Assembly: GCF_021869535.1 (NCBI RefSeq)
Contig: NW_026262709.1
Span: forward strand, 248,001 to 312,000
Direction of reading: 5' to 3'
DNA from: Mytilus californianus
Taxonomy: Eukaryota
DNA: 64,000 bases
Shown: positions 1-42,455 of the stretch, piece by piece
How positions within the stretch are numbered: the first letter of the stretch is position 1
How the letters are laid out: every line of letters starts with the position of its first letter
Notes under the pieces: model-generated
Told to the model about the DNA's origin: nothing
What the model saw: only the letters and a program-made list of their open reading frames with translations
The model's database searches: none
Position numbers and translations under genes: made by a program

Positions 1-425
1 TTGATTGATTGATTGTTGGTTGCTTAACGTCCAGTGGCAAATATTTCATGCATATTCAGGACGAGAACAAATTAACAATAAATACAATAGGTAGGTTCTG
101 TAATAGGGGCGTCCGGGATTTAGGTCGGAGAAATTTAGACTGCCACGGGGAATGAGGGTATATTGGATAGGGACAGAAATTTTGCCTTGCAACAGGTCAC
201 CTACGGACCCCTCAAAGAGTTGTTACAAGGGTTCTTAACGTGCAAAGAGCGTGGCACTCTCTTTACACGAGGCATCGGATTTAACGTCCCCATTCTGACC
301 GGACGTGGCTGCAAATTTGTACATCCCGCACAGCCAAACGGACGCCCCACTTTAGCAAGGGTTTTACTGCCGGTCGGAGGAAGACCAATGGTGACCATAC
401 TTCTATACCCCAGTCACCCTTGGGG
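1..425 (-). mobile_element. ~420-bp SINE-like element (family S1), copy 1, full length
   Basis: Minus-strand sense starts CCCCAAGGGTGACTGGGG and ends ...GGACGTTAAGCAACCAAC(AATC)n; near-identical to nine other copies in 1-16.5 kb. Confidence 0.85.
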
Positions 426-1643
426 TATACTAGATGCAGAAGATAAACTAGTTTTATTAGATGCAGATGAAGGAGGACTATTGGAGATGGAAGAATCATC
501 AATGTCACTGGGAAGATCCCAGACAGATTCACCGCCCCAACTGTCTGATTTAACTGTATCTTTTTTATTTGATTTCTTTTTTTCATTTTTTTTAGATGAT
601 GACATTGAGCTCTGTAAGGAAGATTGAGTTGACTGAGTACTGGTTTTAGAAGGTGTTGGTTTTCTTGGAATTAATATTTTATCGTTAGGTTCTGTTTCAA
701 CAGGCAGCATTGTAAATGTCTCAGCATCAATTGGCCAGGTCATGCGAGTTTGTGTATGCTCGTGACTGAATGAGCGGACAACTTTGCTGGCGTACGATGG
801 TCTGTTCGAAACAAGGAGATCATTCGAAACAGAAGCTATCTGTTTAGCTTTTGGGTAACTGATGTTTCTTTCTGTTTTAATTTTGATAATATTTTTTTCT
901 TTAAGGTAAACAGGGCAGTCCCTAGATGATGAAAAATGGGATTCACCACAGTTTACGCATTTAGAAGATTCAGAGCTACAGGTTGTTCCCTCGTGTCCTT
1001 CGTCAGAACACTTGAAGCATCTCTGCGTACCACGACATTGTTTGCTTCCATGACCAAACTTTTGACAAGTGAAGCATCGAATTGGGTTAGGGATAAACCT
1101 GTCAACTCTGATTCCTAAGCAACCTAAAGTAATAGATGGAGGAGGAGTTGGAGTTCTAAATGTCAAAAGATATGTATTTAATTTGATTATATTTCCATTC
1201 TTTTTTATTTGAAATCTAACAACATCAGTTACACCTTGGCTTGAAAGTTCCTCACAGATTTCTTCCACGGTAAGGTCACCAAGGTATTGACTTCTGTCTC
1301 GAATGATCCCCTTACAGCTGTTCAAACTGTTGTGAGGAGAGGCAGAAACAGGAAAGTTTGTAATTGTTGTCAGTGTAAGCAAATTTGTTGATTGACTTTT
1401 GTTGGAACATTCAACCAACAAATTGCCTGATCTCATTTTTGAAACTTTTTTTACAGTACCAGCAACGCTTTGAATTTGTTTGTGAATCACAAAGGGAGAT
1501 ATTTTGGAAATTGGTTTTTCATCTGTTCCTTTTATTACAATAAATCTGGGCCAACTGTCATCTTCCTGACAGGGCACTGAATCATCACATTTTCTTTTTT
1601 TATGTATTAAAGCTGATTTAGAGGGTTGGTTTTGTTGTGCCAT
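414..1643 (-). CDS. Non-LTR retrotransposon ORF1 (gag-like, three CCHC zinc knuckles; I/Nimb-like group)
   Basis: Knuckles CFTCQKFGHGSKQC, CFKCSDEGHEGTTC and CVNCGESHFSSSRDC; WPRFIVI...ISPFVIHKQI...RSGNLLVEC N-terminal region typical of I-group ORF1; likely ATG at 1643 (MAQQNQ...). The ORF runs into S1 copy 1 and stops there. Confidence 0.85.
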   Translation of the reverse strand: MAQQNQPSKSALIHKKRKCDDSVPCQEDDSWPRFIVIKGTDEKPISKISPFVIHKQIQSVAGTVKKVSKMRSGNLLVECSNKSQSTNLLTLTTITNFPVSASPHNSLNSCKGIIRDRSQYLGDLTVEEICEELSSQGVTDVVRFQIKKNGNIIKLNTYLLTFRTPTPPPSITLGCLGIRVDRFIPNPIRCFTCQKFGHGSKQCRGTQRCFKCSDEGHEGTTCSSESSKCVNCGESHFSSSRDCPVYLKEKNIIKIKTERNISYPKAKQIASVSNDLLVSNRPSYASKVVRSFSHEHTQTRMTWPIDAETFTMLPVETEPNDKILIPRKPTPSKTSTQSTQSSLQSSMSSSKKNEKKKSNKKDTVKSDSWGGESVWDLPSDIDDSSISNSPPSSASNKTSLSSASSIPQG

Positions 1644-2403
1644 AGGAAATGAGAAAGATTCACCATTCTTGTCATCCACCCACCTCGGAGTGCCTACAAG
1701 GGCGATGCTGTGTTTCCGTGGCGAGCCGGGGTCAAGTGCTAATGCTGAAAACGAGCTCCAAGTATAACATGTATAACGTAGCTGGTCCCCAAAATTAGCA
1801 CCCAAGATCCACTGCGGAAAGCACCAGATGTTCCAAGAATGGTATACTCAAGCAGAGCGTATCCATCAAGCGAAATAGAAAGCGTACCACTTGATTGACC
1901 CATGAGCCATCGCCTTCTTCAGTTATCCGAAATATAAATAGCTTTATTTAAAACACTTGTGTATATCATGAAAATTGTTACAAGAAAGCTTATTGTTGAG
2001 GAGTAACTGAAGGGCTCGACATGACCAGCCGATTGATCGAACCGGGTCCATCCGACCTCCCGTTTAGATGATATTGGAGCCAAAGCAGCTTATTGAACTA
2101 TAGTCTTGTCCGTCCGGGTATTTTCTGACCGTAAGGAGTCTGGCTACAGCCCTCATCCGCAAGGATCTCGTCAACCACCGACACGGGTAGCAACCCACGG
2201 CCAATGGGTTGGAGAGCCTATTTTATTCAAAACATCGGGCAACTCGTACGATGTTCGGATCACTTTAGTCTGGTCTCTACCCTTCGACCTGTCCAGCATG
2301 GGTAACCCTACCAGGAGACGAAGCTCCAACTGGCATAGCTCTTGGGGTCACTGAGACACGCAAGCCCCCCGACCACGGCAAGGATAGCGATCCACCGGGG
2401 GGG
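426..2403 (-). mobile_element. 5' portion (5'UTR + ORF1) of an I/Nimb-like LINE
   Basis: GC-richer ~760-nt 5'UTR beginning at a C7 run (2403), followed by intact ORF1; ORF2 is not in the window. Confidence 0.8.
2256..2403 (-). ncRNA. Putative HDV-like self-cleaving ribozyme at the LINE 5' end
   Basis: Manual fold of the minus strand: P1 CCCC(C)GG/UCGGGG(G); P2 GGAUCG (2393-2388)/UGAUCC (2262-2257); P3 CUA/UGG; L3 UCCUUGCCG; GG for P1.1; J4/2 CUAAAG with candidate catalytic C at 2268; ~95-nt P4 insert. Confidence 0.7.
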
Positions 2404-2823
2404 AGTAATAAGGAAGAACCAGAGGATGCCCCAGAGTATGCAATTCAAATTGACTAGGTCCATGTTCTGCTTCTTAACTTGGTTATCATTGGAACTGTGA
2501 CTACGTTACTGAAAAATTATTTTATGAGTTTTGTTACCATTAAGTACAAAATACAATTTAGACAACAAATGTTTCAATTGTTTGCTTTACTCTGTCCTAT
2601 CTTTCAAGGTCTGTTTAAGGCCTTGACCGAACATACTAGCACTCGAGCATGGTAAGTCCATAAATAGAGGACTTATATATTTAATTCCTCCTTAACCAGT
2701 GCAGCTATTACACGTACTAAATGACGAAAAGCACCACTACGCGATACCTGATCAAGACATTTGTTAGGCATTGCAAAAATATCCCTCACTTGTTGAGTTC
2801 ACCTATCAATGTTTACATTATAA

Positions 2824-3251
2824 GATTGATTGATTGATTGTTGGATGCTTAACGTCCAGTGGCAAATATTTCATGCATATTCAGGACGAGAACAAATTAA
2901 CAATAAATACAATAGGTAGGTTCTGTAATTGGGGCGTCCGGGATTAAGGTCGGAGAAATTTAGACTGCCACTGGAAATGAGGGTATATTGGATAGGGACA
3001 GAAATTTAGCCTTGCAACAGGTCACCTACGGACCCCTCAAAGAGTTGTTGCAAGTGTTCTTAACGTGCAAAGAGCGTGGCACTCTCTTTACACGAGGCAT
3101 CGGATTTAACGTCCCCATTCTGACCGGACGTGGCTGCAAATTTGTACATCCCGCACAGCCAAACGGACGCCCCACTTTAGCAAGGGTTTTACTGCCGGTC
3201 GGAGGAAGACCAATGGTGACCATACTTCTATTCCCCACTCACCCTTGGGGG
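2824..3251 (-). mobile_element. S1 SINE-like copy 2
   Basis: Full length; 12-bp TSD TACATTATAAGA at 2814-2825 and 3253-3264. Confidence 0.9.
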
Positions 3252-3938
3252 CTACATTATAAGAACCTAAAGCTTAATGCACAGACGATGCGGACACAAA
3301 TTATCATCATTGATATGCACGTTTATCTATTTCCATGATAAAAGGTTATGTGAATTTCTTGTCACTGAAAGACAAAGCTTTAGTTCCGTGCTTTCTATCA
3401 AGCAAAGTAGACACCATATTATCTCAAGTTGATACCTTAAGATGTTCGACAGATTTGTCTTGAATGAGAAAACATATTTTATAGTCATCCTTGTAAGCAG
3501 TCATTTTACCTGTACTCTTTATATTGTACTCTGCAAATAATGATATTCAGATACTCCCATTCTTTACAACATTGGAAATACTGCGATTAAAGCTGCTATA
3601 AACATTCGAAGAGACTTTGAATTGAATATTAATATACATTAGATCCATGAAATATTTGAAGGAATACCATCAAGTGTCAACTCTGCTAAATATGAAATAG
3701 TGCTTCTTAATAAACTTTCAACATATAATATCTGTATAAGGAAATCCCGATGAAGAAATACAAGATGAGACAATGGTTGGTGCCGTGTCAGTCATTAAGT
3801 TCATCTTGCATTGTTGCAGAAAGAGATGGGATTTTTTTGTGCATCTATAGGACCGTTTACATACCATTCAACGATACGCTTATCATCTTGTTTCCTTGTA
3901 TCACATAACTGTTTTAAGGCATGTTCACAGTACAGTCT

Positions 3939-4366
3939 TTGATTGATTGATTGATTGTTGGTTGCTTAACGTCCAGTGGCAAATATTTCATGCATATTCA
4001 GGACGAGAACAAATTAACAATAAATACAATAGGTAGGTTCTGTAATAGAGGCGTCCGGGATTAAGGTGGGAGAAATTTGGAATGCCACGGGAAATAAGGG
4101 TATATTGGATAGGGACAGAAATTTAGCCTTGCAAAAGGTCACCTACGGACCCCTCAAAGAGTTGTTGCAAGTGTTCTTAACGTACAAAGAGCGTGGCACT
4201 CTCTTTACACGAGGCATCGGGTTTAACGTCCCTATTCTGACCGGACGTGGCTGCAAATTTGTACATCCCGCACAGCCAAACGGACGCCCACTTTGGCACG
4301 GGTTTTACTGCCGGTCGGAGGAGGACCAATGGTGACCTTACTTCTATTCTCCAGTCACCCTTGGGG
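3939..4366 (-). mobile_element. S1 SINE-like copy 3
   Basis: Full length; degraded TSD (CAGTACAGTCTTT / CAGAAAGTCTTT). Confidence 0.85.
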
Positions 4367-5837
4367 TGCAGAAAGTCTTTGAAGTTGCGAAACCAACGTC
4401 TTGACCAATAGACAGAAAATTGACAAAACCAAGGTACAAATTTGATGCAACAAAAGACAACCAGTAGTATATAGACATGTGCTTACAATTAATTTCTGCA
4501 ATTTTTCATTAAAATCTTTACGATAATCGTTTAGCTTACGGGGCAGTCCCAGACCCTCCTCCTTACAATTTGTTTTCCAATGGATATGCTACTGGGCTAA
4601 TGGCTTTTTAAAGCACGAAAACATACAAGAGACTCAGAAGTACCGATCTAAGAGTAGTTGCAGTTATTAGAAGCTATGTAAAGTGAAAACGATTACATGA
4701 CTGATTTATTAGTAATAGTACGGTAAATATTTTCCACTTATAAATTTCTACATTTACAATTTTTGAATGTAGTTCGTGTACTTTTAAATTTTTTCATTTC
4801 TATATATCTTATGGAGGAGGAAACGGTCGAAGGGTCAGATGACTCTGAAAAAGGAGTTGACGTAACATATTTGTTTATGCCATCAATAGAAAAGATGAGT
4901 TGAAACGTCACAAAGAAAGTGTTTAAAAAACGTATTTTTTTTCATATCATTTTACAATGTTAATGTTAAAGTATTACATTAACATACAGAAAGCCATAGA
5001 GTGCGTTGTACTTTAATGTAAATAAATCAAAAAAATATTTTGGTAAACAGTTCATTGTGTACAATGTACAAATTTTACTACAACTCTCAGATGATTTTCG
5101 ACTGTTCGATGATTGAGATGTCTGCTTTACCGTATGATAATCATCTGCAATCAATCAAGAGGATGATTAAGAATGCAATAAAAAAGACTTACTGAAAAAG
5201 ATCTAGCAGGTGTTTGCACGTTAAGTACAATCCGACCTTCACAAATAGGTACATCTATACTTAACCTAGAATCAATTGCTTCCAGTTAAAAAATTAATCA
5301 TATGCATTAATCAAGGAACAGAGAAATAGAAGACTTTTATTTGACATTTAACACCCTGACAGAGCAAAGATTTATCCACAAAGCCATGCAATTCCAAACT
5401 TGTAAATATTACATTTGTGCCAAACATTTGTCATATGTCAAGGAAGCTGATTGAAAAGGGCGAAATTTACAAAAAGTGTGTTTCACTCCCTGTTGATGAT
5501 GGAAGCATCGTCGTTCTGAGGTTGCATGGACATTGGTAGCAGTACATGTCTACTCTTTTATGGTCAAACATCCATGATAAGTTTGCGTGACGAGCTTACA
5601 AGTAGTTTTGCAGTGCATGTTATCAAGTTTTTACTTACCCTTAAATATTTGGGTCAAGTTGTTCATTAGTGTTGTCAATGTTAACAAAATAAGTAACTGT
5701 TGTACTTTAAATTTGTCAAATGGGGAATTTAGAGGAAGTTCAAGAATTGGCTGAGATGGCATATTGTTTAATCAAACTTGCTTGACAACCACATTTGACT
5801 CTCAGTAACTCTACTTCTAAGCCATAACAAAGATTTA

Positions 5838-6229
5838 TTGATTGATTGATTGTTGGTTGGTTGCTTAACGTCCAGTGGCAAATAGTTCATGCATATTCAG
5901 GACGAGAACAAGTTCACAATAAATACAAAAGGTAGGTTCTGTAATAGATTAAGGGATTGAGGTCGGCGAATTTTAGACTGCCACGGGAAATGAGGGTATA
6001 TTGAAATTCAGCCATGCAACAGGTCACCTACGGACCCCTCAAAGAGTTGTTGCAAGGGCACTCCCTTGACACGAGGCATCGGATTTAACGTCCCCATTCT
6101 GACCGGACGTGGCTGCAAATTTGTACATCCCGCACAGCCAAACGGACGCCCCACTTCGGCACGGGTTTTACTGCCGGTCGGAGAGAGACCAATGGTGACC
6201 ATATTTCTATTCCCCAGTCACCCTTGGGG
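5838..6229 (-). mobile_element. S1 SINE-like copy 4
   Basis: Both ends present with small internal deletions; 12-bp TSD CCATAACAAAGA at 5822-5833 and 6231-6242. Confidence 0.9.
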
Positions 6230-6880
6230 CCCATAACAAAGAGGGTCAAAAAGAGGTGGAATATGTTGTACCATACAGATGGGTGCGAAATTGTGTGTTA
6301 ATTGTACAAGCAGAAACACATTGATTAAGCAAAACCAGCTAATGGCTGGAGAAGTTTTGAGCTGGTTTAAGTTAAATATAAATCTGGTATGTATTACGCC
6401 TAAATAAATATAATAGTACATTACAACACGTGGATAAAAAACGGACATCTTCTCAGTGACGTATGTATAATCTTGAAATCAATACAATTATATGGGCGTA
6501 TATTCAAATATGTATGCATCCAAACACCAATTGAATGGTATACGAAACTTAACCTTGGAACAATAATAACTTATGCTAATTTAATTGTAATTGGATTGTG
6601 GTAAATATTTCATTATTATAATTATAATTTTCGACCTTCATTTTCATGTACATAGCGCTACAGTTCCAGGATATTCGTACGACATAGCAGTCTTTCCAGT
6701 AATCGGAAGAAGATAATACCAAGTGGAGAGTAGATGATCACAACACTGAAACTTTCACTCCTTTACTCCAAATTATGCATAATAAACTAATATAAAATAA
6801 CTTTGTCGTTGGTAGTACGACAATAACGTAACAGTGTGATTTTGGTCAAACATCTTGGAATTTGATGCGACTGTCATACA

Positions 6881-7212
6881 TTGATTGATTGATTGTTGGT
6901 TGCTTAACGTCCAGTGGCAAATATTTCATGCATATTCAGGACGAGAACAAATTGACAATAAATACAATAGGTAGGTTCTGTAATAGGGGCTTCCGGGATT
7001 AAGGTCGGAGAAATTAGACTGCCACAGGAAATGAGGGTATATTGGATAGGGACAGAAATTTAGCCTTGCAACAGGTCACCTACGGACAGCTCAAAGAGTT
7101 GTTGCAAGGGTTCTTAACGTGCAAAGAGCGTGGCACTCTCTTTACACGAGGCATCGGATTTAACGTCCCCATTCTGACTAGACGTGACTGCGAATTTGTA
7201 CATTCCGCACAG
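6881..7212 (-). mobile_element. S1 SINE-like copy 5 (head missing)
   Basis: Tail and core present; similarity stops at ~7212 where LINE ORF1-like sequence begins. Confidence 0.8.
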
Positions 7213-10157
7213 TCAGACCTCTCAATTTTACTTTCTAAAGAAACAATACAACCATCAAAATGAAACTACCTAAGTGTTCATTCGACGAAGAAGCGTATAA
7301 GAAATTAAGTTACCTCCCCTGGATAATGTTTCGAAAAAACAAAGACATTCCTTACGAAGAAATCAAAACAAACCAATACAGAAATGCTGCTAAAATGTAC
7401 AGTTTCAAAACAGATGGAAACCGTCTCCTGATATGGATCAAAGCTTTGATGCTCCGATATTAGAAACAACTCGGAAGTGACCCAAATTATTTAATAAACT
7501 GGACCGATAAACGACCATCAGACACTCGTGACGAAATACAAATAGATGTTGATGCACTAATTAAAGGGAGTAAAGAAGTAGATCACAGAATATACACATT
7601 AACAATTAATTTAAGCACAGGAACAATTACAGTGCAAGGAACACATTACAAATATTTTGGCACAAATGAATTTCCAGTCTTGAAACAATTTGTAAATAAA
7701 AGTTCAAAACTTAGTAGTGAAAACAAAAACGAGGCATCAAACAACATGACCCACCCCAACACAGAAGAAAATAAAGACGAACAGGCACTTGATAATAGTC
7801 AGACTACTCTCAAAGAATTGAAACAAACTGACGATATAAACGTCCAAGAACAGACAATATCTGACGTAACTATTATGAACTTAGTTTCACAAACAGATTC
7901 TCTTTCTGACACTTTTCACACACCAGCAATATCCAAAGAAAATATCCTGGAGCTCGACAATGCTGAATTACATCGTTGCCTAGCTGAAAGCACCCCAAAA
8001 ATGAAAACTAAAAAGAATCCAGATATGGAAATTAAAAAACTATGGGAAAAATTTGATAACCAAGAAAAATTCAACAACAAAATCATTAAATTGACCTCTG
8101 CGCTTCAAAAACAATTTTGTGAAATCACAGTATTGCAATCAAAAACTAACCAACCCATTTTGAAAGAAAACACTGAAGCATTAGAACATTTCAATACAGA
8201 GAAAAACAATATTATATCAGAACTAAAAACCTGCCTCTCTGAGAAAAACAAAATTATTGCAAATCTTCAGGAACAATTAAGAATTCAGGAACAAACTATT
8301 TTAGGCATGAAAGTTGAACAAAGCACTCTTACTACTCAGTTTCAAGAAGAACAAGCTGTCTCAGAGACCAGAAAAGAAACTATAAATAAACTAGAACTTG
8401 AATTAAATCAAGTGACCACCACAATTGCTAAAAGCAAAACAATCAAACCAACACCTGAGAAGGATAAATTACAATCAGTTGTAAGTGATCGTGTGAAAGT
8501 CAATGAGTCAACACACAACAGATTTAGTGCATTAGAAGATCAAAATACAGAAGAAACCAGAAACATAGTTAACCATAAATCACTAGATGCATTAATTATA
8601 ACCGACTCTCATGGAAAAGATCTTGACCCGTCTAAACTTTATAGGTACAGAAAAGTAAATGTACATGTTCTCCCAAGAGGTAAAAAGACTATTCAAGGTG
8701 CCATTGAATATATTGAACAAACTGATATTCAAGCCAAAAATATTCTTGTCATGGTTGGTAGCAACGATCTTTCACAGAATAGATCACCAGATACCACAGC
8801 AGAACACCTCAGTACTCTCAAGAATCTAGTCAACAACAGATTTCCAAATACTAACATTCATGTTTTTCCTCTATTTCATCGTCTCAATGAAGAACAATTT
8901 AACCAAGATGTAGATACAGTGAACACGAGGCTGGAACGCCTAGTCTCCAATTCTCTATCCCTAGTCCGAAACGACAACATCAATGTTAAAAACCACCGTT
9001 ACTATCACACCGATGGAGTACACCTATCGACAGTGGCAATTTCGAACTTGTACGTGCAATAAAATCCCACATGAATCCAGTTCTTGGACTAAAAGACTAC
9101 CATAACTACAATCAATCTGAAAATATTCATCAATTAACAAAAAACTATTTGATACTCTAATAAGACCCATAAGTACTTATGGATCTGAAATATGGATTAG
9201 TGACTACAATATAAAAGACTCAAATATTGATAAATTACCTTTTGAAAAAATTCTTAATAAATTCTGTAAAAATATTTTAGGAGTTCACAAGAGAAGTTCA
9301 AATATGGCAGTGAACTGTGAATTAGGAAGACAACCTACTTTGAATCATATACTAATCCTAGCCCTTAAATATTATGATCGACTTAAACAGCTTCCATCTG
9401 ACAGACTGCTTAGTGAAATATATAAACTAGATCATTCATTATATACTGATGGACACAGATCTTGGCACAAATTTATCTCGAACTCTATTGAAAAATATAA
9501 TTATATAACAGACAATAATATTAATTTAAAGAACTTAAAGGAAAATATTAATAACCAACATTCTAATAACACTTTGCATAATCTAAAAAAATTACGTTCT
9601 ATTGAACAAGACAATAAATTACATTTCTATGCCAATATTTATTCAGAATAATTTAAATTGCAAAATTATCTATCGTATAAATGTTCTAATATAACAAGAA
9701 ATCTTACAAAATTAAGAATTAGTTCCCACCCTCTTTTGATTGAAAAGGGTAGATATTTCAGACCAAAAATTAAGAGAGAAAACAGAATATGCTTGAACTG
9801 CAATCAAATAGAGGATGAAAAACATTTCCTTATTTATTGCAAAAAATTTGAAAATTATAGAAAACAACTATTTAATAAACTAAATATTAATTCACAAGAT
9901 CTGTGCCCTGAAAAAGTTATGAAAACCATTATTAGTTTACTTAACCCACAAAATATTGATGATACAAAAAATATATGCCATTACATACAATTATGCTTTG
10001 AATCTTTGTAATTTTATTCATTTAACCTTGATTTGATATTTTGTCATACATAATATATATTTATCTATCTGATGTAATATCATGTTAATGTGGGGGAAGA
10101 CATCATTATACTTTGTATTGATTTTCCTGATTTAATAAAACTTGAAACTTGAAACTT
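7213..10157 (+). mobile_element. Internally deleted non-LTR retrotransposon (CR1/L2/RTE-X-type, esterase ORF1), lacking EN and RT
   Basis: ORF1 with coiled coil and SGNH motifs joined at ~9140 to an ORF2 C-terminal remnant (FDTLIRPISTYGSEIW...ELGRQP...KLRISSHPLLIEKGRY...CLNCNQIEDEKHFLIYC); AATAAA and (AAACTTG)n tail at 10134-10157. Confidence 0.8.
7632..9062 (+). pseudogene. LINE ORF1 with coiled coil and SGNH/GDSL esterase domain (frameshifted at both ends)
   Basis: Motifs ITDSHGK, VGSNDL and TDGVHLS; upstream fragment at 7260-7463; frameshift near 9045. Confidence 0.75.
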
Positions 10158-11362: not shown

Positions 11363-11715
11363 CCCCAAGGGTTACTGGGGAATAGAAGTATGGTCACCAA
11401 TGGTCCGTCCGACCGGCAGTAAAACCCTTGCGAAAGTGGGGCGTCCGTTTGGCTGTGCGGGATTTACAAATTTGCAGCCACGTCCGGTCAGAATGGGGAC
11501 GTTAAATCCGATGCCTCGTGTAAACAGAGTGCCACGCTCTTTGCACGTTAAGAACCCTTGCAACAACTCTTTGAGGGGTCCGTAGGTGACCTGTTGTAAG
11601 GCTAAATTTCTGTCCCTATCCAATATACCCTCATTTCCCGTGGCAGTAAATTTCTCCGAACTTAATCCCGAAAACCCCTATTACAGAACCTAACTGTTGT
11701 ATGTATTGTTATTTC
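11363..11715 (+). mobile_element. S1 SINE-like copy 6 (tail lost, internal indels)
   Basis: Starts CCCCAAGGGTTACTGGGG; homologous through the core. Confidence 0.85.
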
Positions 11716-12190: not shown

Positions 12191-12230
12191 CGTGGGTTGC
12201 TAAACTTTCCATTTTGTTTTGGTACAATTC

Positions 12231-13199: not shown

Positions 13200-14800
13200 T
13201 TACCAGTTCCAGGGAGATAAACAACCAGATAACCAATGGAATGAAAAGAGCATATCAGGGACACTACGATAGCATAAGTGTCAAAATATCCGTCCTACGT
13301 GTAATAGTTGAATGGACGGAGAACCCCCTCTGATCACTCAAACCTTTGCAAAACAACAGTCTCCCCGATTTTGATATGCAAACAACCTTAATCATGTGTA
13401 CTGCGGAGATGACACCTCCCTTCTGATACCAGAAGTGGAGGGGTTTCCTTTTGATGACAAGAGTGAATCCTAGGAAATTATTTAATACCCTCCACTATAG
13501 AGCCGGTAGAGATATGTACCAGAGGGGGACAGTTCCAAGTCTGTTTTTAGGGTCTCATCATTTCCCATGCACCGCTAAATAATTTCTGCGCTCATTTGTC
13601 TTTTGGGAAAACCTTTAGTAACACTGAGTACGAATGTTTCAATAGTGCCTGAATGTTGTGACAGGTGTGTGCCGTCATGTCTGAATAAATTCGACTCTGA
13701 GGCTTAGATGGTTGGATACATTATACATGTTATAATGTATCGACCTTCTTTCTCCATAATCCCCAAGGGTGACTGGGGAATGAAGTATGGTCACCATTGG
13801 TCTTCCTCCGACCGGCGGTAAAACCCTCGTCAAAGTGGGGCGTCCGTTTGGCTGTGCGGGATGTACAAATTTGCAGGCACGTCCGGTCAGAATGGGGACG
13901 TTAAATCCGATGCCTCGTGTAAAGAGAGTGCCACGCTCTTTGCACGTTAAGAACCCTTGTAACAACTCTTTGAAGGGTCCGTGGGTGACCTGTTGCAAGG
14001 CTAAATTTCTGTCCCTATCCAATATACCCTCATTTCCCGTGGCAGTCTAAATTTCTCCGACCTTTATCCCTTAATCTATTACAGGACCTACCTATTGTAT
14101 TTATTGTGAACTTGTTCTCGTCCTGAATATGCATGAAATATTTGCCACTGGACGTTAAGCAACCAACAATCAATCAATCAATCTTCCTCCATAAACGATC
14201 TTACAGCACAGTTGACTCTTTTTTTTTTTTGGGCTATTTCTACTTACTTTGACCTTAATGTTCCATGCTAATAGGGCCTTGGTAATATATCTAACGATAT
14301 GATTTAAATGTCAGCTGCGGAAATTTTCATTCTTAAAAATGAGCATTTGATGTTCTCGATTAAATCTGTTGACTTCATAAGCACCAAATCATTTGCACCT
14401 AGATGTACAAAGATATAATTAGGGGCTGGCCACTTTTTTATTTCACTTTCAAAAGATAAATCCAGATCTTTCCATTTCATTCCTGATTTGTTATCTATTT
14501 AATTTGTACTCCTAGCCTGTTCATATTAAGAATTTTCCCATCAGAATGGCTAGCAGCTGTTACATCAGCACAGTTGACTGATATAATGTTGTAGGCATAA
14601 GTTTAGTTCTGTTCTATATGTACATTTAAACAAAAATGTATTTTCAACAAGGAATTTTTATTAAGTGCTCAAACGCAACTGACGATCACCTACCTTTCCC
14701 ACTTTTTAATAGCTTCGTCATTAATACCACGATTGCTCGGCAACATTACCATTTTATAAATACCCAGCAATGCCAGCAATGCTTTACCACTGACGAAGCC
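13200..14800 (-). pseudogene. Degenerate DIRS/Ngaro-like (tyrosine recombinase) retrotransposon relic
   Basis: Minus-strand fragments: GINDEAIKKW (YR C-terminus-like, ~14700), HLGANDL (14385-14405) and HDGTHLS (13659-13679) of an SGNH-like ORF; many stops; interrupted by S1 copy 7. Confidence 0.5.
13761..14183 (+). mobile_element. S1 SINE-like copy 7
   Basis: Full length; imperfect TSD sharing CTCCATAA. Confidence 0.9.
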
Positions 14801-14836: not shown

Positions 14837-15225
14837 CCCCAAGGGTGACTGGGGGATAGAAGTATGGTCACCATTGGTCTTCCTTCGACCGGCAGTAAAA
14901 CCCTTGCTAAAGTGGGGCGTCCGTTTGCCTGTGCAGGATGTACGAATTTGCAACCCCGTGAAAAGAGAGTGCCACGCTCTTTGCACGTTAAGAACCCTTG
15001 TAACAACTCTTTGAGGGGTCCGTAGGTGACCTGTTGCAAGTCTAAATTTCTGTCCCTATCCAATATACCCTCGTTTCTCGTGGCAGTCTAAATTTCTCCG
15101 ACCTTGACCCCGGACGCACCTATTACAGAACCTACTTATTGTGTTTATTGTTAATTTGTTCTCGTCCTGAATATGATTGAAATATTTGCCACTGGACGTT
15201 AAGCAACCAACAATCAATCAATCAA
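14837..15225 (+). mobile_element. S1 SINE-like copy 8 (internal deletion)
   Basis: 13-bp TSD TTTAATTATAATA at 14823-14835 and 15226-15238. Confidence 0.9.
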
Positions 15226-15245
15226 TTTAATTATAATAGTTATAT

Positions 15246-15667
15246 CCCCAAGGGTGACTGGGGAATAGAAGTATGGTCACCATTGGTCTTCCTCCGACCG
15301 GCGGTAAAACCCTCGTCAAAGTGGGGCGTCCATTTGGCTGTGCGTGATGTACAAATTTGCAGCCACGTCCGGTCAGAATGGGGACGTTAAATCCGATGCC
15401 TCGTGTAAAGAGAGTACCACGCTCTTTGCACGTTAAGAACCCTTGTAACAACTCTTTGAGGGGTCCGTAGGTGACCTGTTGCAAGGCTAAATTTTTGTCC
15501 CTATCCAATATACCCTCATTTCCCGTGGCAGTCTAAATTTCTTCGACCTTAATCCCTTAACCTATTACAGACCCTACCTATTGTATTTATTGTGAACTTG
15601 TTCTCGTCCTGAATATGCATGAAATATTTGCCACTGGACGTTAAGCAACCAACAATCAATCAATCAA
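15246..15667 (+). mobile_element. S1 SINE-like copy 9
   Basis: 13-bp TSD TATAATAGTTATA at 15232-15244 and 15668-15680. Confidence 0.9.
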
Positions 15668-16023
15668 TATAATAGTTATAAATTTTTGATCCCCATCAAT
15701 TGATACAAAATCCAGGGTAAGATGGAGTTTTTAATGTTTTGCAGCAATGTATTGACACATCTCATCTTTCTGGAATTTGACGTGTTAATAACTGTTCAAT
15801 GATCTTGTTCATTTTGCGTCCGCTGAATTGGCCATTATTTTGAGAATTAAAGAGATATGGAAATGTGGAATTTGTCAAAGAGACAACAATCCGACTATAA
15901 AGCAGACAACAGCCGAAGGCCACCAATCGGTCGTCAATGCAGCGAGAAAATCCCGCACCCGAGGTGCTATACGTCGTATCTCGGTATTTTATACATCCAA
16001 CATTTATGCATTAATTTATTTAT

Positions 16024-16446
16024 GATTGATTGATTGTTGGTTGCTTAACGTCCAGTGGCAAATATTTCATGCATATTCAGGACGAGAACAAATTAACAAT
16101 AAATACAGTAGGTAGGTTCTGTAATAGAGGCGTATGGGGTTGAGGTCGGAGAAATTTAGACTGCCACGGGAAATGAGGGTATATTGGATAGGGACAGAAA
16201 TTTAGCCTTGCAACAGGCCACCTACGGACCCCTCAAAGAGTTGTTGCAAGGGTTCTTAACGTGCAAAGAGCGTGGCACTCTCTTTACACGAGGCATCGGA
16301 TTTAACGTCCCCATTCTGACCGGACGTGGCTGCAAATTTGTACATCCCGCACAGCCAAACGGACGCCCCACTTTGACGAGGGTTTTACCGCCGGTCGGAG
16401 GAAGACCAATGGTGACCATACTTCTATTCCCCAGTCACCCTTGGGG
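16024..16446 (-). mobile_element. S1 SINE-like copy 10
   Basis: 13-bp TSD ATTTATTTATGAT at 16014-16026 and 16450-16462. Confidence 0.9.
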
Positions 16447-35070: not shown

Positions 35071-36276
35071 GCATCATTTACAGTAAAATTTTACTTGTCA
35101 AAAGTACGGGATTAACTTTGGAATAATTGTAATGATTTGCATGCATGGACTTGATTATGATTTACTGTGGAAACATCTACAAATTTTCCCCTACTAATCA
35201 AGTATTTATCGACCAATGTAAAAAACATGGGGGAAGGAGTGGTCATTTAATTGTATCGGGGTGAAAATATACATTCTCGTTCAGTCAGCGGGAGGAAGTT
35301 TAATTTGACAGATGTTTATCTGATGCTTTGTGTTTGGGTAGTCAAGTTCTCTTACGCAAAATAATCCCTTGCAATAATTTAGTGTGGTATCTGTAAAATT
35401 CCTATTGCAAGTCAAAATGTTCTGCCCAGTGGAAGTCTAAATTTCCTTCATCCCAGCCGATCCGTTTCTAACCTATAATATGTTCTGCTTCGGAATATAC
35501 ATGGAATATTTTCAATTAATTGTTATTTCAGCAAATAGCTACTCTCAGTCATTTTGAAATATATTGAAGTTCCTAAAATTATACAATTGCAATGAAAGAG
35601 ATGTGGTATGAACGTCAGTAAGACAACTTTCCAGAGGCGGATTTAGAGGGGCAGGGTGCCCAGCTCCCCTTATGGAGCTACATATAAATTATGATAAATA
35701 CATAGACTTTTTACATGTCCCACTCCAAAAGTTGCTTACTTTTGGGGCCCTGTTCCCCCCTTTTTTCAAAACCTTTGATCCGCATCTGCTTTCTACCATA
35801 ACCCAAATGACGTGCGTATAAGCAACTGTAGGTCAAAGTAAGGCTTCAGCGAGCGCAAAATCCATACCGTATATAGAAGGCCACATAAGACCACATTTTC
35901 ATATTTTATATGTCATGTCTAGTCTATGTATCAATTTGAATTTTGGAAACCATCTTCTAATTGCCGAGAGGCTGAGGTAGTCGAGTGTTGAAGAAGTCGT
36001 TTAAGGTATACACGTCACTGTAAAATACCACAATTTCAATGTTAATTCGGACCCGTTTAGAACACCAAACCGATGAGTTCGATTTCAAACAATAGATGAT
36101 AAGGTTTGCCAGCTGTTACATGTACTACATGTAGCCAATGTCGGCAGTTCCCGCATGCACGAAGGGAAAGCCGTGATATATATTGACTGAAAAATCCAGA
36201 TTTGAATAGCATGTCAAACGAGAGATAAGACAACAATAATTATAGTATACAATAAAATAAGGTAAATACCAATTTA

Positions 36277-36625
36277 AGGGTTACTAGGGTATAGACATAA
36301 GTTCATCCCTCGAACTTCTTCGGGATGAATTAATATGCGACCACGTCCGGACGGAATGGGGACGTTAAATACGATGCCTCGGCGTAAAGGGAGTGCCAAG
36401 CTCTCTTTATGTTACAAAATCATAGCAATAAACTTTGAAAAGCTAGCCTATCGAACATACTCCAATTTTTGGGTGGCAGTAGAAATTCTAGCTCTTATTC
36501 TACGTCGATCCATTTTGCATACCATACCTATTGGATAAACTGTTAAATGATTGTTAATTTGTTCTCGTATTGAATAAGCATGAACTATTTACCACTGGAT
36601 TGCAAATAACAACAATTAATTAAAG
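36277..36625 (+). mobile_element. Old diverged S1 copy
   Basis: Retains CCACGTCCGG...GGGGACGTTAAAT.CGATGCCTC core and AATTTGTTCTCGT...CCACTGGA tail. Confidence 0.7.
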
Positions 36626-38412: not shown

Positions 38413-40134
38413 AATTTGCGTGTTTTACATACCTTAGAAATTAGCTCCCAATAGCACTTTAATATTTACTTCAACATTTTTACATTCAACATGTTTAAAT
38501 TATTAAACACAATTATTAAGAAAAACATTTATAGATTATATATATTGTTTAGAGTCCAATAAAAAGAGGTTAATTTGGAACAATTTTTTTAACGTCATAA
38601 TTTGAGTTAAATATTATCATGATTACTGAAATTATCTATGTATACGTAAACAAATTAAATTCATTTTTTCCAACACGCAAATTTCATGTTACCACGAAAA
38701 CTTTGTTATTCCAAGATCATAATAATATATTGCCTTACGGATGTTTTATATGAATGAGTTTAAATGTTTTAGTTGAATACATTAACCATGTTAACAAAAA
38801 TATTCTTTTCAGATCCTGTTGAGCATGTCATTCGTGCATTTTGTGTATTTATCGTATTTACCGTTTACAACAATTCTTGTTTACACACGTTTATTTCATT
38901 GCGGTTGTGTATACAATTTTTGATCAATAAATGTAAGAAACAAATTGATCTTGCGATCAGCAGGCAATGGATACAGGTATGTGCGTATTTATTTCTATTT
39001 TTACAACATTGTTTACAAAAACGAAAGTGACATCAATATTGTTCCGATTTATCATTAAATTATAATTAAAGTTTATGAGGTAATTAAGCGAAAAAAGTAT
39101 AAACAAAATGTATATTTACTTACTGTCGTCTAAAAATAATGTGGAATCAATAATCTACATTACACTGACAAAACAGGGACTCTATATTATAATTTTGAAG
39201 TAACGGTTCACATGAGGTCATCACGTCACATGGTATATATTTGATAATAGTATCTGATAAGTACCAATTACTCAATTGTATAATTTATTGGCTGTATACA
39301 TCGTACAATACGTGTAGTTCTGTATATAAATTGATAAGGAAAAAAAACGCGATTTGATTAACATGATTAATCATCTCAAATATTTAATAATAAAAGGGGG
39401 ATGGGTAAGATCTTTTCTGTTAAGGTGTTTTATGCTTTTTTGAACATTTGTTAACTGAAAATATATGTGCTGTTAACTGTATATGTTATTGACTGTTTTT
39501 ATACGACCGCAAAAAAATTGTGTTCGTATATTGCCATCACGTCGTCGTCGTCCGAAGACATTTGGTTTCCGGACAATAACTTTAGTTTAAGTGTATGGAT
39601 CTCTATGAAATTTAAGCAAAAGATTCAATAACACAAATGGAATTTTTTTTTCCTTAAGGTTTAACAAAATTATCAATTTTCCGTTATTTCTTTTAGGGGT
39701 GTAAATTTTTTTTCTCCAAGATTTAACAAATTATCAATTTTCAAAAATAAAAATAGGGGGTCACAATTTATTTTGCTAGTTCTTTCTATATAGTCTGAAA
39801 ACAGATTTACTAAGTACTGCGCAACAGCACAGTGTATTGCACAACAGCAAGAAATCTTCAATTGAATATAAATTCAAATCATATAACCAATTGCAAGTTC
39901 TTTGACTACATTTATTCTGTGTCAGAATACCTATAATGTGTCAAATATTTAATTACATATATCATTTGCACATTTGGACCATTTCATTTCACGTATGCTC
40001 AATATTTAAAACAGAGCCCACACTATAATATTTACCGGGTTAACTTTGTTCACAAAGCCATTATCATTTCTCACCGTCAGGAACCGAAACTCCAGGGGTT
40101 GACGGGGTATAAAAATATAGTCATCCGTTGGACT

Positions 40135-40503
40135 TCTTCCGTGTGACAGTTAAAGTCTTGCTAAAACAGGACGTTCATATGGCTTTGGGGATCTATAAAT
40201 ACGCAGTAACGTCCTCGTGTGGAATGAGTGCCACACTCTCTGCAGTTAAAAAACCAACGCTTACAACAATCTTTGAGGAGTTCGTTGTTGGCCTGTTGAA
40301 AGGCATAATTTCTGTCTCTATCGAAGTTTACCTCATTTTCCAGTCTTGCCAGTGGTAGACGACATTTTACCCACCCACGTTAATCCTGGTCGACCCATTT
40401 TTCAAAACAGACCTTTTGTATTAACAGTTAATTGGTTTATCGTCCTGAATATGCATGAAATATTTGCCATTTGACGTTAAGAAAACAACAATCAATCAAT
40501 CAT
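40135..40503 (+). mobile_element. Old diverged S1 copy
   Basis: Degenerate core; tail CGTCCTGAATATGCATGAAATATTTGCC...(AATC)n. Confidence 0.7.
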
Positions 40504-40595
40504 CAGTAGGATGATAAGATAAATACATATTGTTAACAGAATATTGATATCTCTTTATATTCAAAGTTCAATATATACATTTCATCAATTTTCCA

Positions 40596-41021
40596 CCCCA
40601 AGGGCGACTGGGGAAAAGAAATATGGCCACTCTAGGTCTTCTTCCGACCTGCAAATAAACTCTTGCAAAACTAGGGGTGTTCGTTTGGTTGTGCGGAATT
40701 TACAAGTACGCAGCCACGTCCGGTCAGAATGGGGACGTAAAATCCGATGCCTCGTGTAGAGAGAGTGTCACGCTCTCTGCACGTAAAGAACCATTGCAAC
40801 AACTCTTTTTGAAGGGTCCATAGATGTCCTTGTTGCAAGGCAAAATTTCTGTCCCTATTCAATATTCCCTCATTTTACAGTGGCAGTCAAAATTTCCCCG
40901 ACCTTTATCCTGTACGACCTCTATACAGAACCTACCTATTGTATGTATTATTAATGTGTTCTCGTCCTAAACATGCATGCATTATTTGCCGCTGGACGTT
41001 AAGCAACTAATATTCAATCAA
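40596..41021 (+). mobile_element. S1 copy, moderately diverged, full length
   Basis: Starts CCCCAAGGGCGACTGGGG; ends GGACGTTAAGCAAC...CAATCAAT. Confidence 0.85.
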
Positions 41022-42455
41022 TGAAATCATTTTTTCTATCATTGAACGACATTGTAAACTCTAGAAGTAGGGCCTGTATATTACAATCACCCTGTCCGTC
41101 CGTTTATCAAACAAATATGTTTGTCGCACTTTTCTTAAACTGCTTTACCGAATGATTTCGTATTTAGTCAGCAGCCTGACAGTCATGAGTTGGAACGTGT
41201 GAGAAATTTTTGGATATGTCAGCCATCTACTTCCTGTTTGCGCGCCGATACCGTGATTTTTTTAATATACGGAATGAACTTAAAATTTTCGTCACACATG
41301 TTCTTTTATACTACTGAACGGAAGGACTTTATATATATTGTCAGCAATTCAACAGCGATGAGGTGTGAGTGTGTGCACATGTCGAACGAGTGGGGATATG
41401 CTTAGCTCGGTAACGCGTACATGCTTGTTTTATCGCATTATAGTTCAACGAGTCAGAACCGATACCAAAAGATATTTGCATTGTGACTATACGGCGATAC
41501 GAGACGTATCACATTTTTGTCCTCTAATTTTATTGTAAAGAAGACCGAAAAAATAAATATAAAACAATTCGATCATCTTACCTAAGAAAGGTTCTACTGT
41601 ACTTTTTCGTTAGAATTATTTATATTTGAAGATAAAGGCAATAATGTCAAAACAATGGATTGTTGAGGTAATGTTAAGCAGAAAACAATAATAGATGATA
41701 AAATTCTAAATTGAATAAAATAGTTATAGTTAATTAAATAGGGAGTGATAGGAATTGAAAATAACAAATATGAAAATCTCAGAGGAAGTATGTGTTAGCA
41801 AAATATCAGAAAGTTATTCGCTCGATTGAAAATATAATTTATTGCATCTCCTCATAAAGTTCATAAATACCTTAAATACACTCAATGCTTCACTTACTTC
41901 GACTGGAGATCAAATTAAAAAGTAACTTTATGTTAAGCACAAGTTATATGTTCATGTATCTGTTCCCAATCGGGAACCTCGTCAGTGGTTGTATTTGCAA
42001 TAACTTACTATTTTTGGTTGCTCTTCAGTGAATAACGATGGATTTCAGATTCTTAATAGTCTCTTTACAAATACATTTTCAATTTTTTAAAGTTTACTAA
42101 ATGGTATGGGCTATGTTCATTGTTGAAGGTCGTCCAGTGCCCTTCATAGTTGTTTACATTCTCGCTCTTTCGTCTCTGGTGGATAGTTGCCTCAATGGCA
42201 ATCATACCACATCTCCTAATCATGCATGCTTATGTTTACTTTCAGATTTAGAGTGTACAATATTGAATAAACCACTTCATTATAATGGTCAAAACCTTTG
42301 TGTGGACCTCTAGATGCTTTGGTTTATGTTTTGTTGGGTTGCTTTCTGATTGATGAATACCCCTCATCTATTTTATATTTATGTTATTTATCAACACGAA
42401 GTAGGCATATTGTAGAATATATTAGCACCCACACTTTATTTTAGATAGCAATAGA

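What the first reader, a model, noticed from the sequence alone, without database searches (positions are those of the whole stretch)
1..425. Abundant SINE-like family with an invariant, structured, non-tRNA 5' head
Seen: ten copies whose head is present start at the same base (CCCCAAGGGTGAC), carry (AATC)n tails and often 12-13 bp TSDs, so they are retroposed. No A box or GGTTCGA B box is visible, unlike the tRNA SINEs at 12870 and 47879. The head offers several pairings: CCCCA/TGGGG hairpin whose loop GGTGAC can pair with downstream GTCACC (pseudoknot), TGGTC-TTCCTCC-GACCG hairpin, and GGCA..TGCT / GGCA..TGCC / GGCG..CGTC, which varies between copies while keeping pairing. Inference: the precise 5' end may come from an unknown internal promoter or an RNA-processing or catalytic motif. 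CCCCAAG and CTAAAGTG also occur ~70-80 nt apart in the adjacent LINE ribozyme, a weak hint of shared origin.
Basis: partly seen in the sequence, partly recalled or inferred. Interest (0 to 1): 0.7.

Follow-up and report, generated by a model that had tools for sequence, protein, structure and literature searches.

The report
Mussel SINE with a LINE-derived head
This abundant short jumping element of a mussel has no tRNA-type head; its first ~100 bases are a folded RNA module (two pseudoknots) copied from the 5' end of I/Nimb-type LINEs, a rare but already described kind of SINE whose head function is still untested.

Summary
The 425-bp element (window 1-425, minus strand) is a young retroposon. 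The genome has 5,618 exact heads and 8,874 exact tails. Target-site duplications were found in 63 of 73 copies, and the tail is (AATC)n.

The head is not tRNA, 5S or 7SL. It is homologous to the 5'-terminal module of I/Nimb-group LINEs. A covariance model built only from LINE heads (abalone, unnamed ENA and JGI contigs) matches the SINE heads over their full length, starting at the SINE's first base (E about 5e-4 to 1e-3).

- helix A: CCCCA/TGGGG
- helix B: GGTGAC/GTCACC, a pseudoknot with A
- helix C: TGGTC/GACCG
- helix D: GCAG/CTTGC
- a fifth helix, E, pairs the loop of C with the GGGG after CTAAAGT, making a second pseudoknot

The topology is not HDV-like, and Rfam holds no such family.

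The element fits the "LP-SINEs" (LINE-promoter SINEs) of Matetovici et al. 2016, so it is a new member of a known kind. Its tail copies the 3' stem-loop of the I-clade LINE family in the same window. Whether the head is a promoter, a processing or catalytic RNA, or a protein-binding site is untested.

The scan had already reached the same reading on other DNA of this genome (s1-340065).

The parts
1..425 (-). Full SINE copy 1. Its head is at 425 and its (AATC)n tail runs off the window start. It is inserted in the I-clade LINE with TSD TGCATCTAGTA.
326..425 (-). LINE-derived head module (SINE positions 1 to about 100).
   Evidence: The LINE-only covariance model R1 matches 334-425 over its full length, E 0.0011. 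Alignment A3.
421..425 (-). Helix A, 5' strand CCCCA (SINE 1-5).
   Evidence: Pairs with 408-412. The LINE counterpart is CCCCG/CGGGG or UCCCG/CGGGA.
408..412 (-). Helix A, 3' strand TGGGG (SINE 14-18).
   Evidence: helix 1: 93.5% of cells paired in LINE heads
413..418 (-). Helix B, 5' strand GGTGAC (SINE 8-13), lying in the loop of helix A.
   Evidence: Pairs with 390-395. LINE versions are GCGGG/CCCGC, GTGGGT/ACCCAC, GTGGAA/TTCCAC and GGACGT/ACGTCC.
390..395 (-). Helix B, 3' strand GTCACC (SINE 31-36). It closes pseudoknot 1.
   Evidence: helix 1: 5 of 6 pairs changed on both sides
396..407 (-). Joiner TATAGAAGTATG, with conserved AGAA..TA (LINE: TTAGAATAG). It contains no C.
   Evidence: alignments
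383..387 (-). Helix C, 5' strand TGGTC (SINE 39-43).
   Evidence: Pairs with 371-375. The LINE counterpart is TCCG/CGGA; all 4 pairs change on both sides (helix 3).
371..375 (-). Helix C, 3' strand GACCG (SINE 51-55).
377..380 (-). Helix E, 5' strand CCTC in the loop of helix C (SINE 46-49).
   Evidence: Pairs with GGGG at 345-348. LINE versions are CCTGG/CCAGG, CCAGG/CCTGG, CCCC/GGGG, CCCAT/ATGGG and CCTCT/AGGAGG.
345..348 (-). Helix E, 3' strand GGGG after CTAAAGT (SINE 78-81). It closes pseudoknot 2.
   Evidence: helix 2: 5 of 5 pairs changed on both sides
355..370 (-). Hairpin D: GCAG, loop TAAAACC, CTTGC (SINE 56-71). The LINE form is GTCG-TAAGAGG-CGAC. This is the only part of the head that varies between SINE subfamilies.
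349..354 (-). Conserved joiner TAAAGT (SINE 72-77). With the last base of hairpin D (C71, window 355) it reads CTAAAGT. The LINE form is CTAAA.
126..306 (-). Body. It holds GGGGACGTTAAATCCGATGCC and two further ACGTTAA motifs. It is probably a Deu/Nin-DC-type core; that rests on recall and was not tested.
   Evidence: Sequence. The same GGGACGTTAAACCC motif occurs in unrelated metagenome contigs.
16..68 (-). LINE-type 3' tail. A stem CGTCC (59-63) / GGACG (28-32) is followed by TTAAGCAACCAAC.
   Evidence: It is homologous to the LINE tail CGCCGC/GCGGCG..TAAAGCAACCAAC.
1..15 (-). (AATC)n tail, continuing beyond the window start.
426..2403 (-). 5' part of the I-clade LINE: head at 2256-2403, ORF1 at 426-1805. 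ORF2 lies upstream of the window in L031. This LINE family is the likely partner.
2826..3250 (-). SINE copy, 97.6% identical.
3943..4366 (-). SINE copy.
5842..6229 (-). SINE copy with two internal deletions.
6881..7212 (-). 5'-truncated SINE copy.
11363..11714 (+). 3'-truncated SINE copy.
13761..14181 (+). SINE copy of the GGCGG/CTCGTC subfamily.
14837..15667 (+). Two SINE copies head to tail. The second inserted at the tail of the first.
16023..16446 (-). SINE copy.
40092..41022 (+). Two older relatives: 40092-40502 (about 76% identical) and 40596-41022 (about 85%).
36276..36620 (+). Old related element. It shares the first ~35 bases of the head and the core but lacks the D/E part.

Best explanation
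This is a non-autonomous retroposon built from three modules.

(1) Head, about 100 nt. It was copied from the extreme 5' end of an I/Nimb-group LINE. It folds into two consecutive H-type pseudoknots (helices A+B, and C+E with hairpin D nested inside). Conserved single strands are AGAA..UA, the UAAAA start of the hairpin D loop, and CUAAA.

(2) Body, probably of the Deu/Nin-DC kind.

(3) Tail, about 55 nt plus (AATC)n. It copies the 3' stem-loop of the I-clade LINE family that lies in the same window. That LINE's reverse transcriptase most likely recognises the tail and inserts copies by target-primed reverse transcription, leaving 8-15 bp TSDs.

Shown: the module structure, the homology of head and tail to LINE ends, the covarying helices, retroposition, and the copy numbers.

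Inferred: the head works at the RNA level and gives the transcript its fixed 5' end. My ranking of head functions, as rough odds that need not sum to one:
- About 0.35-0.4: processing out of longer host or read-through transcripts, by self-cleavage or by stopping a 5'-3' nuclease. This is the role HDV-like ribozymes play at other LINE 5' ends, including a sister LINE in this window.
- About 0.25: an internal Pol II promoter, as proposed for LP-SINEs.
- About 0.25: a binding site for the LINE proteins.

These roles do not exclude one another. The L1Tc Pr77 module is both a promoter and a ribozyme.
For: Head homology:
- The covariance model R1 was built from 35 LINE heads only. It hits the SINE heads over model positions 1-89.
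- Each hit starts at the SINE's first base. Nine of the eleven best window hits are SINE heads, the best at E 5e-4 to 1.3e-3.
- The block CTAAA(G)TGGGGCG.CC.GTTTG is shared with LINE L067, reached by 4 of 1000 shuffles.

Structure:
- In LINE heads 90.6% of cells pair, against 30-53% when the partners are slid. None of 500 shuffles reaches the covariation score.
- With SINE rows added, 91.2% of cells pair and 13 of 15 pairs change on both sides (this alignment is fitted to the model).
- SINE subfamily changes sit in hairpin D and keep pairing.

Position at the 5' end: five copies of one LINE share their 5' boundary exactly at TCCCC.

Tail: the last ~55 nt align with the LINE 3' end, and the inner stem is CGTCC/GGACG against CGCCGC/GCGGCG.

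Partner LINE: it has APE, RT and RNase H domains.

Retroposition. Abundance.

Precedent: LP-SINEs (PMC4758252) and L1Tc/NARTc Pr77 (PMC3185411 and PMC3383444, listed).
Against: - The model's E-values are rough and only moderately strong. The near-identical SINE copies count as one observation.
- An nhmmer profile of four LINE heads did not reach the SINE at E<=1.
- I could not compare the head with the published LP-SINE and Nimb-17_LMi / I-3_DR / RTE-9_CPB sequences, because the figures and supplements are not held.
- No LINE with this head type was found in the mussel genome. The canonical LINE hairpin-D 18-mer has 0 matches there, and the whole-genome model search scored only 150 of about 95,000 candidates and found nothing. 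The donor is therefore unidentified.
- No function of the head has been tested. No catalytic core of a known ribozyme is present.
- The Deu/Nin-DC assignment of the body rests on my recollection only.
Confidence: 0.8

Rival explanations
1. The double-pseudoknot head is a self-cleaving ribozyme of a class not yet described. It cuts just upstream of Y-CCCC and so releases LINE and SINE RNAs from co-transcripts.
For: - Helix A starts at the first bases of the RNA, and the fold is a conserved pseudoknot with invariant single-stranded motifs.
- HDV-like ribozymes do this job in R2, RTE and L1Tc (papers listed).
- A SINE without a small-RNA promoter needs some way to make defined transcripts.
Against: - No Rfam ribozyme family matches the SINE or LINE heads at E<=10.
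- The topology lacks P3/L3/P1.1 between the strands of helices A and B.
- The joiner has no conserved C; in the SINE it has none at all.
- There is no experimental evidence.
- The first base is family-specific and unpaired, which says nothing either way.
Confidence: 0.2
2. The head is an internal RNA polymerase II promoter acting at the DNA level, as proposed for LP-SINEs. Its RNA folding is incidental or serves the LINE only.
For: - Its position at the extreme 5' end and the LP-SINE proposal.
- LINEs of the I/jockey group use internal promoters (established knowledge).
- The first base is templated and subfamily-specific, as expected for a fixed start site.
- Many M1-type LINE copies carry a purine just before CCCC.
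Against: - Compensatory changes in five helices indicate selection on the RNA rather than on DNA motifs.
- The SINE, which encodes nothing, keeps all five helices intact.
- No Inr-like sequence is present at the start.
- There is no excess of a cap-derived extra G: G is found at -1 in 3 of 86 copies and at -2 in 22 of 86.
Confidence: 0.25
3. The head is a binding site for the LINE's proteins, or a nuclease-stopping protective fold. The SINE would then carry both ends of the LINE RNA and compete for the machinery or survive decay.
For: - Both ends of the SINE are LINE-derived and structured.
- The ratio of exact heads to exact tails is about 0.63, so many copies are full length.
- R2 5' RNA pseudoknots bind R2 protein, and folded RNAs that stop exonucleases are known (my knowledge; a paper on the latter turned up).
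Against: This alone does not explain how the SINE is transcribed. There are no data on binding or nuclease resistance.
Confidence: 0.2
4. The head is a badly decayed tRNA-, 5S- or 7SL-derived Pol III head.
For: There are weak A-box-like strings (TAGAAGTATGG, TTGCTAAAGTGG). The consensus has no TTTT run.
Against: - ARAGORN and Rfam find nothing.
- The head's alignment score with the mussel's 5S rRNA is reached by 212 of 300 shuffles.
- There is no B box.
- The lack of TTTT is not significant: 214 of 2000 shuffles also have none.
- The same bases are explained by homology to LINE heads.
Confidence: 0.03

Closest known systems
LP-SINEs (LINE-promoter SINEs) of gastropods and bivalves, Matetovici et al. 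2016, PMC4758252
   Same: They have TSD-flanked copies and short tandem-repeat tails. The head is not a small RNA but the first ~70 bp of Nimb/I/RTE LINE 5' UTRs. The oyster Sgl_LP family also has a partial Nin-DC body. Abalone has such SINEs, and the abalone LINEs fetched here carry this head.
   Different: LP-SINEs were not reported in Mytilus; the word does not occur in that paper. The paper treats the head as a possible promoter and describes no RNA fold. I could not align this head with their sequences.
L1Tc / NARTc Pr77 module of trypanosomes (PMC3185411, PMC3383444)
   Same: A LINE and its short non-autonomous partner share the same 5'-terminal ~77-nt module, which defines the RNA 5' end.
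   Different: Pr77 folds as an HDV-like ribozyme and also has shown promoter activity. The mussel module has a different topology and no tested activity.
HDV-like ribozymes at LINE 5' ends (R2, RTE; PMC3774820), and the LINE head at window 2256-2403
   Same: The position is the first base of the element. A 5' strand pairs back into a pseudoknot. A hairpin is followed by C-U-A-A-A and then a strand that pairs upstream.
   Different: In the SINE, the strands of helices A and B have no P3/L3/P1.1 between them. There is no candidate catalytic C in the joiner. There is no Rfam match.
HCD (highly conserved domain) tRNA-derived SINEs of bivalves with Nimb/CR1-Zenon/L2 tails (Martelossi et al. 2024, PMC11481361)
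   Same: Both occur in bivalves. Both have LINE-derived tails of 35-61 bp and microsatellite ends. The Deu superfamily is present in Mytilus. Both tend to form tandem-like arrays.
   Different: All 201 SINEs of that survey have tRNA-related heads. This family would not pass such a screen.

Membership tests
SINE / non-autonomous LINE-dependent retroposon | Short, non-coding, dispersed copies with TSDs and a LINE-like 3' end. | tested here: met
   425 bp; TSDs in 63 of 73 copies; 5,618 exact heads and 8,874 exact tails; the tail is homologous to the LINE 3' end.
LP-SINE (LINE-derived head) | The head is homologous to the extreme 5' end of Nimb/I-group LINE 5' UTRs. | tested here: met
   The LINE-only model R1 hits the SINE heads over their full length from base 1. 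The LINEs used have APE+RT+RNase H ORF2s and include abalone elements.
LP-SINE (LINE-derived head) | Sequence match to the published LP heads and to Nimb-17_LMi, I-3_DR and RTE-9_CPB. | not testable with these tools
   The figures and supplements of PMC4758252 are not held. No Repbase or Dfam is available.
tRNA-derived SINE | A tRNA-like head with A and B boxes. | tested here: not met
   ARAGORN finds none. Rfam gives no tRNA hit at E<=10. No GGTTCGA is present in the element.
5S-derived SINE | The head is similar to 5S rRNA. | tested here: not met
   Local alignment of the head with the mussel's own 5S rRNA scores 16, reached by 212 of 300 shuffles.
HDV-like ribozyme | Nested double pseudoknot in the order P1-P2-P3/L3-P1-P1.1-P4-J4/2-P2. 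| tested here: not met
   Only 8 nt lie between the strands of helix A, all taken up by the helix B strand, so there is no P3/L3. Read. There is no Rfam HDV-family hit.
HDV-like ribozyme | A catalytic C in the joiner before the 3' strand of P2. | tested here: not met
   The SINE joiner UAUAGAAGUAUG has no C. No C is conserved there in LINE heads.
HDV-like ribozyme | Self-cleavage at the 5' edge. | not testable with these tools
   This needs an in vitro assay.
Deu / Nin-DC SINE superfamily | A central domain homologous to the Deu/Nin-DC consensus. | not tested
The resemblance (GGGACGTTAAA.., GGCAC....CAAAATTTC) is recalled from memory. String searches of the paper library found nothing useful.
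Pol III transcript | Avoidance of internal TTTT terminators. | tested here: inconclusive
   The consensus has 9 TTT runs and no TTTT run, but 214 of 2000 dinucleotide shuffles also lack TTTT.

The most novel reading that the evidence does not exclude
The ~85-nt double-pseudoknot module is a new class of 5'-end-forming RNA: either a self-cleaving ribozyme or an exonuclease-stopping fold. It heads I/Nimb-group LINEs and LP-type SINEs in more than one animal phylum (molluscs here; insects and vertebrates if the published LP/Nimb heads are the same module). It is absent from Rfam. It would do the job that HDV-like ribozymes do in sister LINE families.
Probability: 0.2. Interest if true: 0.85.

Novelty: new member of a known kind. 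Interest (0 to 1): 0.55.

Why it matters
SINEs are usually defined by a Pol III head taken from a small RNA. This family adds a very young and abundant example to the few SINEs that use the 5' end of a LINE instead. Surveys that require tRNA heads, such as the 2024 bivalve survey, would miss it.

The comparison also shows that this 5' module is a conserved RNA fold with two pseudoknots, not only a stretch of conserved DNA. It occurs in at least 120 JGI metagenome contigs of unidentified source, and Rfam has no family for it. That makes an open question directly testable: how do these LINEs and SINEs get their exact 5' ends? The candidates are a promoter, self-cleavage, a nuclease stop and protein binding.

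Tried and rejected
- tRNA, 5S and 7SL heads: rejected.
- HDV-like fold for the SINE head: I tried several registers by hand and none gives the required order of helices. The "P3/L3-like" insert in the L069 LINE is a plain extra hairpin, CCTCC-TCGAT-GGAGG.
- Folding energy of the head: no signal (z = -0.28).
- Pol III terminator avoidance: not significant.
- A head-like match at L002 656-700: it lies inside a gag-like coding region and is a chance match.
- nhmmer with a four-sequence LINE profile did not reach the SINE. Plain pairwise alignment was significant only for the CTAAA..GTTTG block.
- Finding the donor LINE in the mussel genome failed. The model search over the genome scored only 150 of about 95,000 candidates and found nothing. 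The canonical LINE hairpin-D 18-mer has no match.
- Published consensus sequences: supplements are not held, and sequence strings were not found in the paper library.
- The SINE lying between ORF1 and ORF2 of the LINE, both here and in an M. galloprovincialis copy, looked like a SINE-carrying LINE subfamily. The TSDs differ, so these are independent insertions.

Full report
**What is there**

On the minus strand, window 1-425 is one copy of a 425-bp repeat. It begins CCCCAAGGGTGACTGGGG and ends ...CTGGACGTTAAGCAACCAAC(AATC)n.
- The 13-mer head occurs 10 times in the window at up to two mismatches, against 0.47 expected.
- BLAST shows nine full or nearly full young copies (85-100% identical), plus truncated and older relatives at 36276, 40092, 40596 and 44219.
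- The window comes from a 1.65-Gb genome. Earlier notes of the scan call it a mussel. Relatives of the LINE ORF1 in this window are named Mytilus in public records.
- Genome-wide there are 5,618 exact copies of the 18-base head and 8,874 of an 18-base tail string, with none for the reversed controls. Many copies are 98-100% identical.
- This window holds 7 exact 18-mer heads in 64 kb, against about one per 294 kb on average. It is a local hot spot.

**Retroposition and the true 5' end**

Of 73 full copies in the mussel DNA I could hold, 63 have a TSD of 8-15 bp, mean 12.3. Between the TSD and CCCC there are usually one or two extra bases. The base just before CCCC depends on the subfamily: C in 22 of 25 copies of one, T in 8 of 10 of another. 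That base is therefore part of the element, and the RNA starts Y-CCCCAAGGG. G is rare at -1 (3 of 86) and only mildly raised at -2 (22 of 86), so there is no clear sign of a copied cap.

**What the head is not**

- Rfam gives nothing at gathering scores over the whole window, and nothing relevant at E<=10 over 1-500. ARAGORN finds no tRNA.
- The mussel's own 5S rRNA is not similar to the head: the score is reached by 212 of 300 shuffles.
- The consensus has no TTTT run, but 11% of dinucleotide shuffles have none either. This is no evidence for Pol III.
- Folding energy is ordinary.

**What the head is**

The literature gave the lead. Matetovici et al. 2016 (PMC4758252) described "LP-SINEs" in snails, abalone, oysters and scallops. 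Their head is the first ~70 bp of Nimb/I/RTE LINE 5' UTRs, and one oyster family has a partial Nin-DC body. I tested this independently.

*Collecting LINE heads.* Starting from ORF1 of the LINE in this window, I found relatives and fetched their contigs.
- Five copies of one LINE in an ENA assembly share their 5' boundary exactly at TCCCC.
- LINEs from two abalone species and from ENA contigs begin with the same pattern. It is CCCC, about 9 bases, GGGG, TAGAATA, a strand complementary to those 9 bases, a C-rich stretch, GTCG-TAAGAGG-CGAC, CTAAA, and a G-rich strand.
That gave about 130 heads.

*Structure in the LINE heads.* On a MAFFT alignment of 35 non-redundant LINE heads (A2), five helices are supported.
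- 90.6% of cells pair, against 30-53% when the partners are slid.
- 11 of 24 pairs change on both sides.
- None of 500 shuffles reaches the covariation score.

*Testing the SINE against a LINE-only model.* A covariance model built from these LINE heads alone (R1) was run over the window with filters off.
- It hits the SINE heads over all 89 model positions.
- Each hit starts at the SINE's first base. Nine of the eleven best hits are SINE heads, and the best have E of 5e-4 to 1.3e-3.
- The calibration is rough and the copies are near-identical, so this counts as one moderately strong hit. The exact register at the element's terminus and the collinear helices make chance unlikely.
- With SINE rows in the model-fitted alignment, 91.2% of cells pair and 13 of 15 pairs change on both sides.

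**The fold in the SINE** (SINE positions; window coordinate = 426 minus position)

| Helix | SINE positions | SINE strands | LINE forms |
|---|---|---|---|
| A | 1-5 / 14-18 | CCCCA/UGGGG | CCCCG/CGGGG, UCCCG/CGGGA |
| B | 8-13 / 31-36 | GGUGAC/GUCACC | GCGGG/CCCGC, GUGGGU/ACCCAC, GUGGAA/UUCCAC, GGACGU/ACGUCC |
| C | 39-43 / 51-55 | UGGUC/GACCG | UCCG/CGGA (absent in some LINE families) |
| D | 56-59 / 68-71 | GCAG/UUGC | GUCG/CGAC; one divergent head has CUAG/CUAG |
| E | 46-49 / 78-81 | CCUC/GGGG | CCUGG/CCAGG, CCAGG/CCUGG, CCCC/GGGG, CCCAU/AUGGG, CCUCU/AGGAGG |

- Helices A and B form one H-type pseudoknot. Helices C and E form a second, with hairpin D nested inside it.
- Conserved single strands are AGAA..UA between A and B, UAAAA at the start of the D loop, and CUAAA after D.
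- Among 87 mussel copies, nearly all subfamily variation in the head lies in helix D. A58-U69 alternates with G58-C69 with no intermediate seen in two or more copies. Both changes are CpG transitions, so I count this as one event.
Helix E is an addition.

**Relation to the adjacent LINE "ribozyme"**

The LINE at window 426-2403 (APE, RT and RNase H) starts TCCCCCCC-GGTGGATCGC...GGGGGG. It then has CTTGCGT, a hairpin GTC...GAC with a long insert, CTAAAGT, and GATCC, which pairs with GGATC near the start.
- It shares hairpin D, CUAAAGU and a downstream 5' UTR block with the other LINE heads. Its 5' half, however, has the nested topology of HDV-like ribozymes, as note s1-330656 says.
- Model R1 does not match it.
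The CCCCAAG inside the LINE's insert is not.
- The SINE head itself cannot take the HDV order of helices, and its joiner has no C.

**Tail and partner**

The last ~55 bases of the SINE align with the 3' end of this LINE family. Some LINE copies end ...GCGGCGTAAAGCAACCAAC(AATC)n. The inner stem is CGUCC/GGACG in the SINE and CGCCGC/GCGGCG in the LINE. This is the usual sign of a stringent LINE-SINE partnership.

The canonical LINE hairpin-D 18-mer has no match in the mussel genome. The donor of the head is therefore not this LINE, and I could not identify it.

**Body**

The middle of the element carries GGGGACGTTAAATCCGATGCC and related motifs. From memory these resemble the Deu/Nin-DC domain. 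The same GGGACGTTAAACCC motif occurs in unrelated metagenome contigs. I could not test this.

**How it most likely works**

*Shown:* the element is a chimera of a LINE 5' module, a body and a LINE 3' module. It is retroposed and has been active recently.

*Inferred:* the LINE's reverse transcriptase recognises the 3' stem-loop and repeats. The head acts at the RNA level, because five helices are kept by compensating changes and a non-coding SINE keeps them all.

My rough odds for the head's role, which need not sum to one:
- 0.35-0.4 that it forms the 5' end from longer transcripts, by self-cleavage or a nuclease stop;
- 0.25 that it is an internal Pol II promoter, as proposed for LP-SINEs;
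- 0.25 that it binds LINE proteins.

The L1Tc Pr77 module (papers listed) shows that promoter and ribozyme roles can coexist.

**Verdict**

- The element is a new, mussel member of the known LP-SINE kind.
- The conserved double-pseudoknot fold of the head is not in Rfam. I did not find it described in the papers I could read. Its function is open.
- The scan had already reached the same reading on other DNA of this genome (s1-340065).

Noticed in passing
window 19-28 and 59-68 (minus strand; SINE 398-407 and 358-367): The two flanks of the SINE's 3' stem-loop are identical to the mussel 5S rRNA at positions 31-40 (GTTCTCGTCC) and 51-60 (GTTAAGCAAC), in the same order. Two collinear exact 10-mers are reached by only 2 of 3000 dinucleotide shuffles. 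The LINE tail shows a weaker version. The 5S model's first look at the genome gave 22,510 candidates, which may reflect this.
   Followed up: partly
window 1-2403 with L031; L065:4585-8411: A SINE copy sits between ORF1 and ORF2 of the I-clade LINE here. Another sits at a similar place in an M. galloprovincialis copy of the same LINE. The TSDs differ (TGCATCTAGTA against CATAGGTGACCGT), so these are independent insertions. Six of the first 30 SINE loci also hold this LINE nearby.
   Followed up: partly
window 1-17000: This is a SINE hot spot. There are ten copies in 17 kb, including a head-to-tail pair at 14837-15667 in which the second copy inserted at the first one's tail. The genome average is about one exact head per 294 kb.
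   Followed up: partly
L153:1374-1525: A metagenome contig carries two copies of the LINE head module in tandem, about 70 nt apart.
   Followed up: no
L076:3781-3860: This is a divergent head-like module (E 7e-4). All four pairs of hairpin D are changed (CUAG/CUAG instead of GUCG/CGAC) while helices A and B are kept.
   Followed up: no
whole genome G000: The LINE hairpin 18-mer GTCGTANRAGGCGACTAA was found in at least 120 JGI metagenome contigs but has no match at all in this mussel genome. Here the module seems to survive mainly in the SINE, in a diverged form.
   Followed up: partly
window 36276-36620 and 40092-40502: These older relatives show module loss. The first keeps helices A/B and the core but lacks C, D and E. 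The second lacks about 30 nt of the core.
   Followed up: no
L081-L200: Some metagenome families have the D/E half of the module preceded by quite different 5' sequences: a (GTAA)n-like run, or a T/C-rich stretch ending CAGAATAG. The two pseudoknots may therefore be exchangeable units.
   Followed up: no
window 60407-60483 (minus): An AT-rich stretch matches model R1 weakly (15 bits, E 0.04). It is probably chance, and I did not examine it.
   Followed up: no
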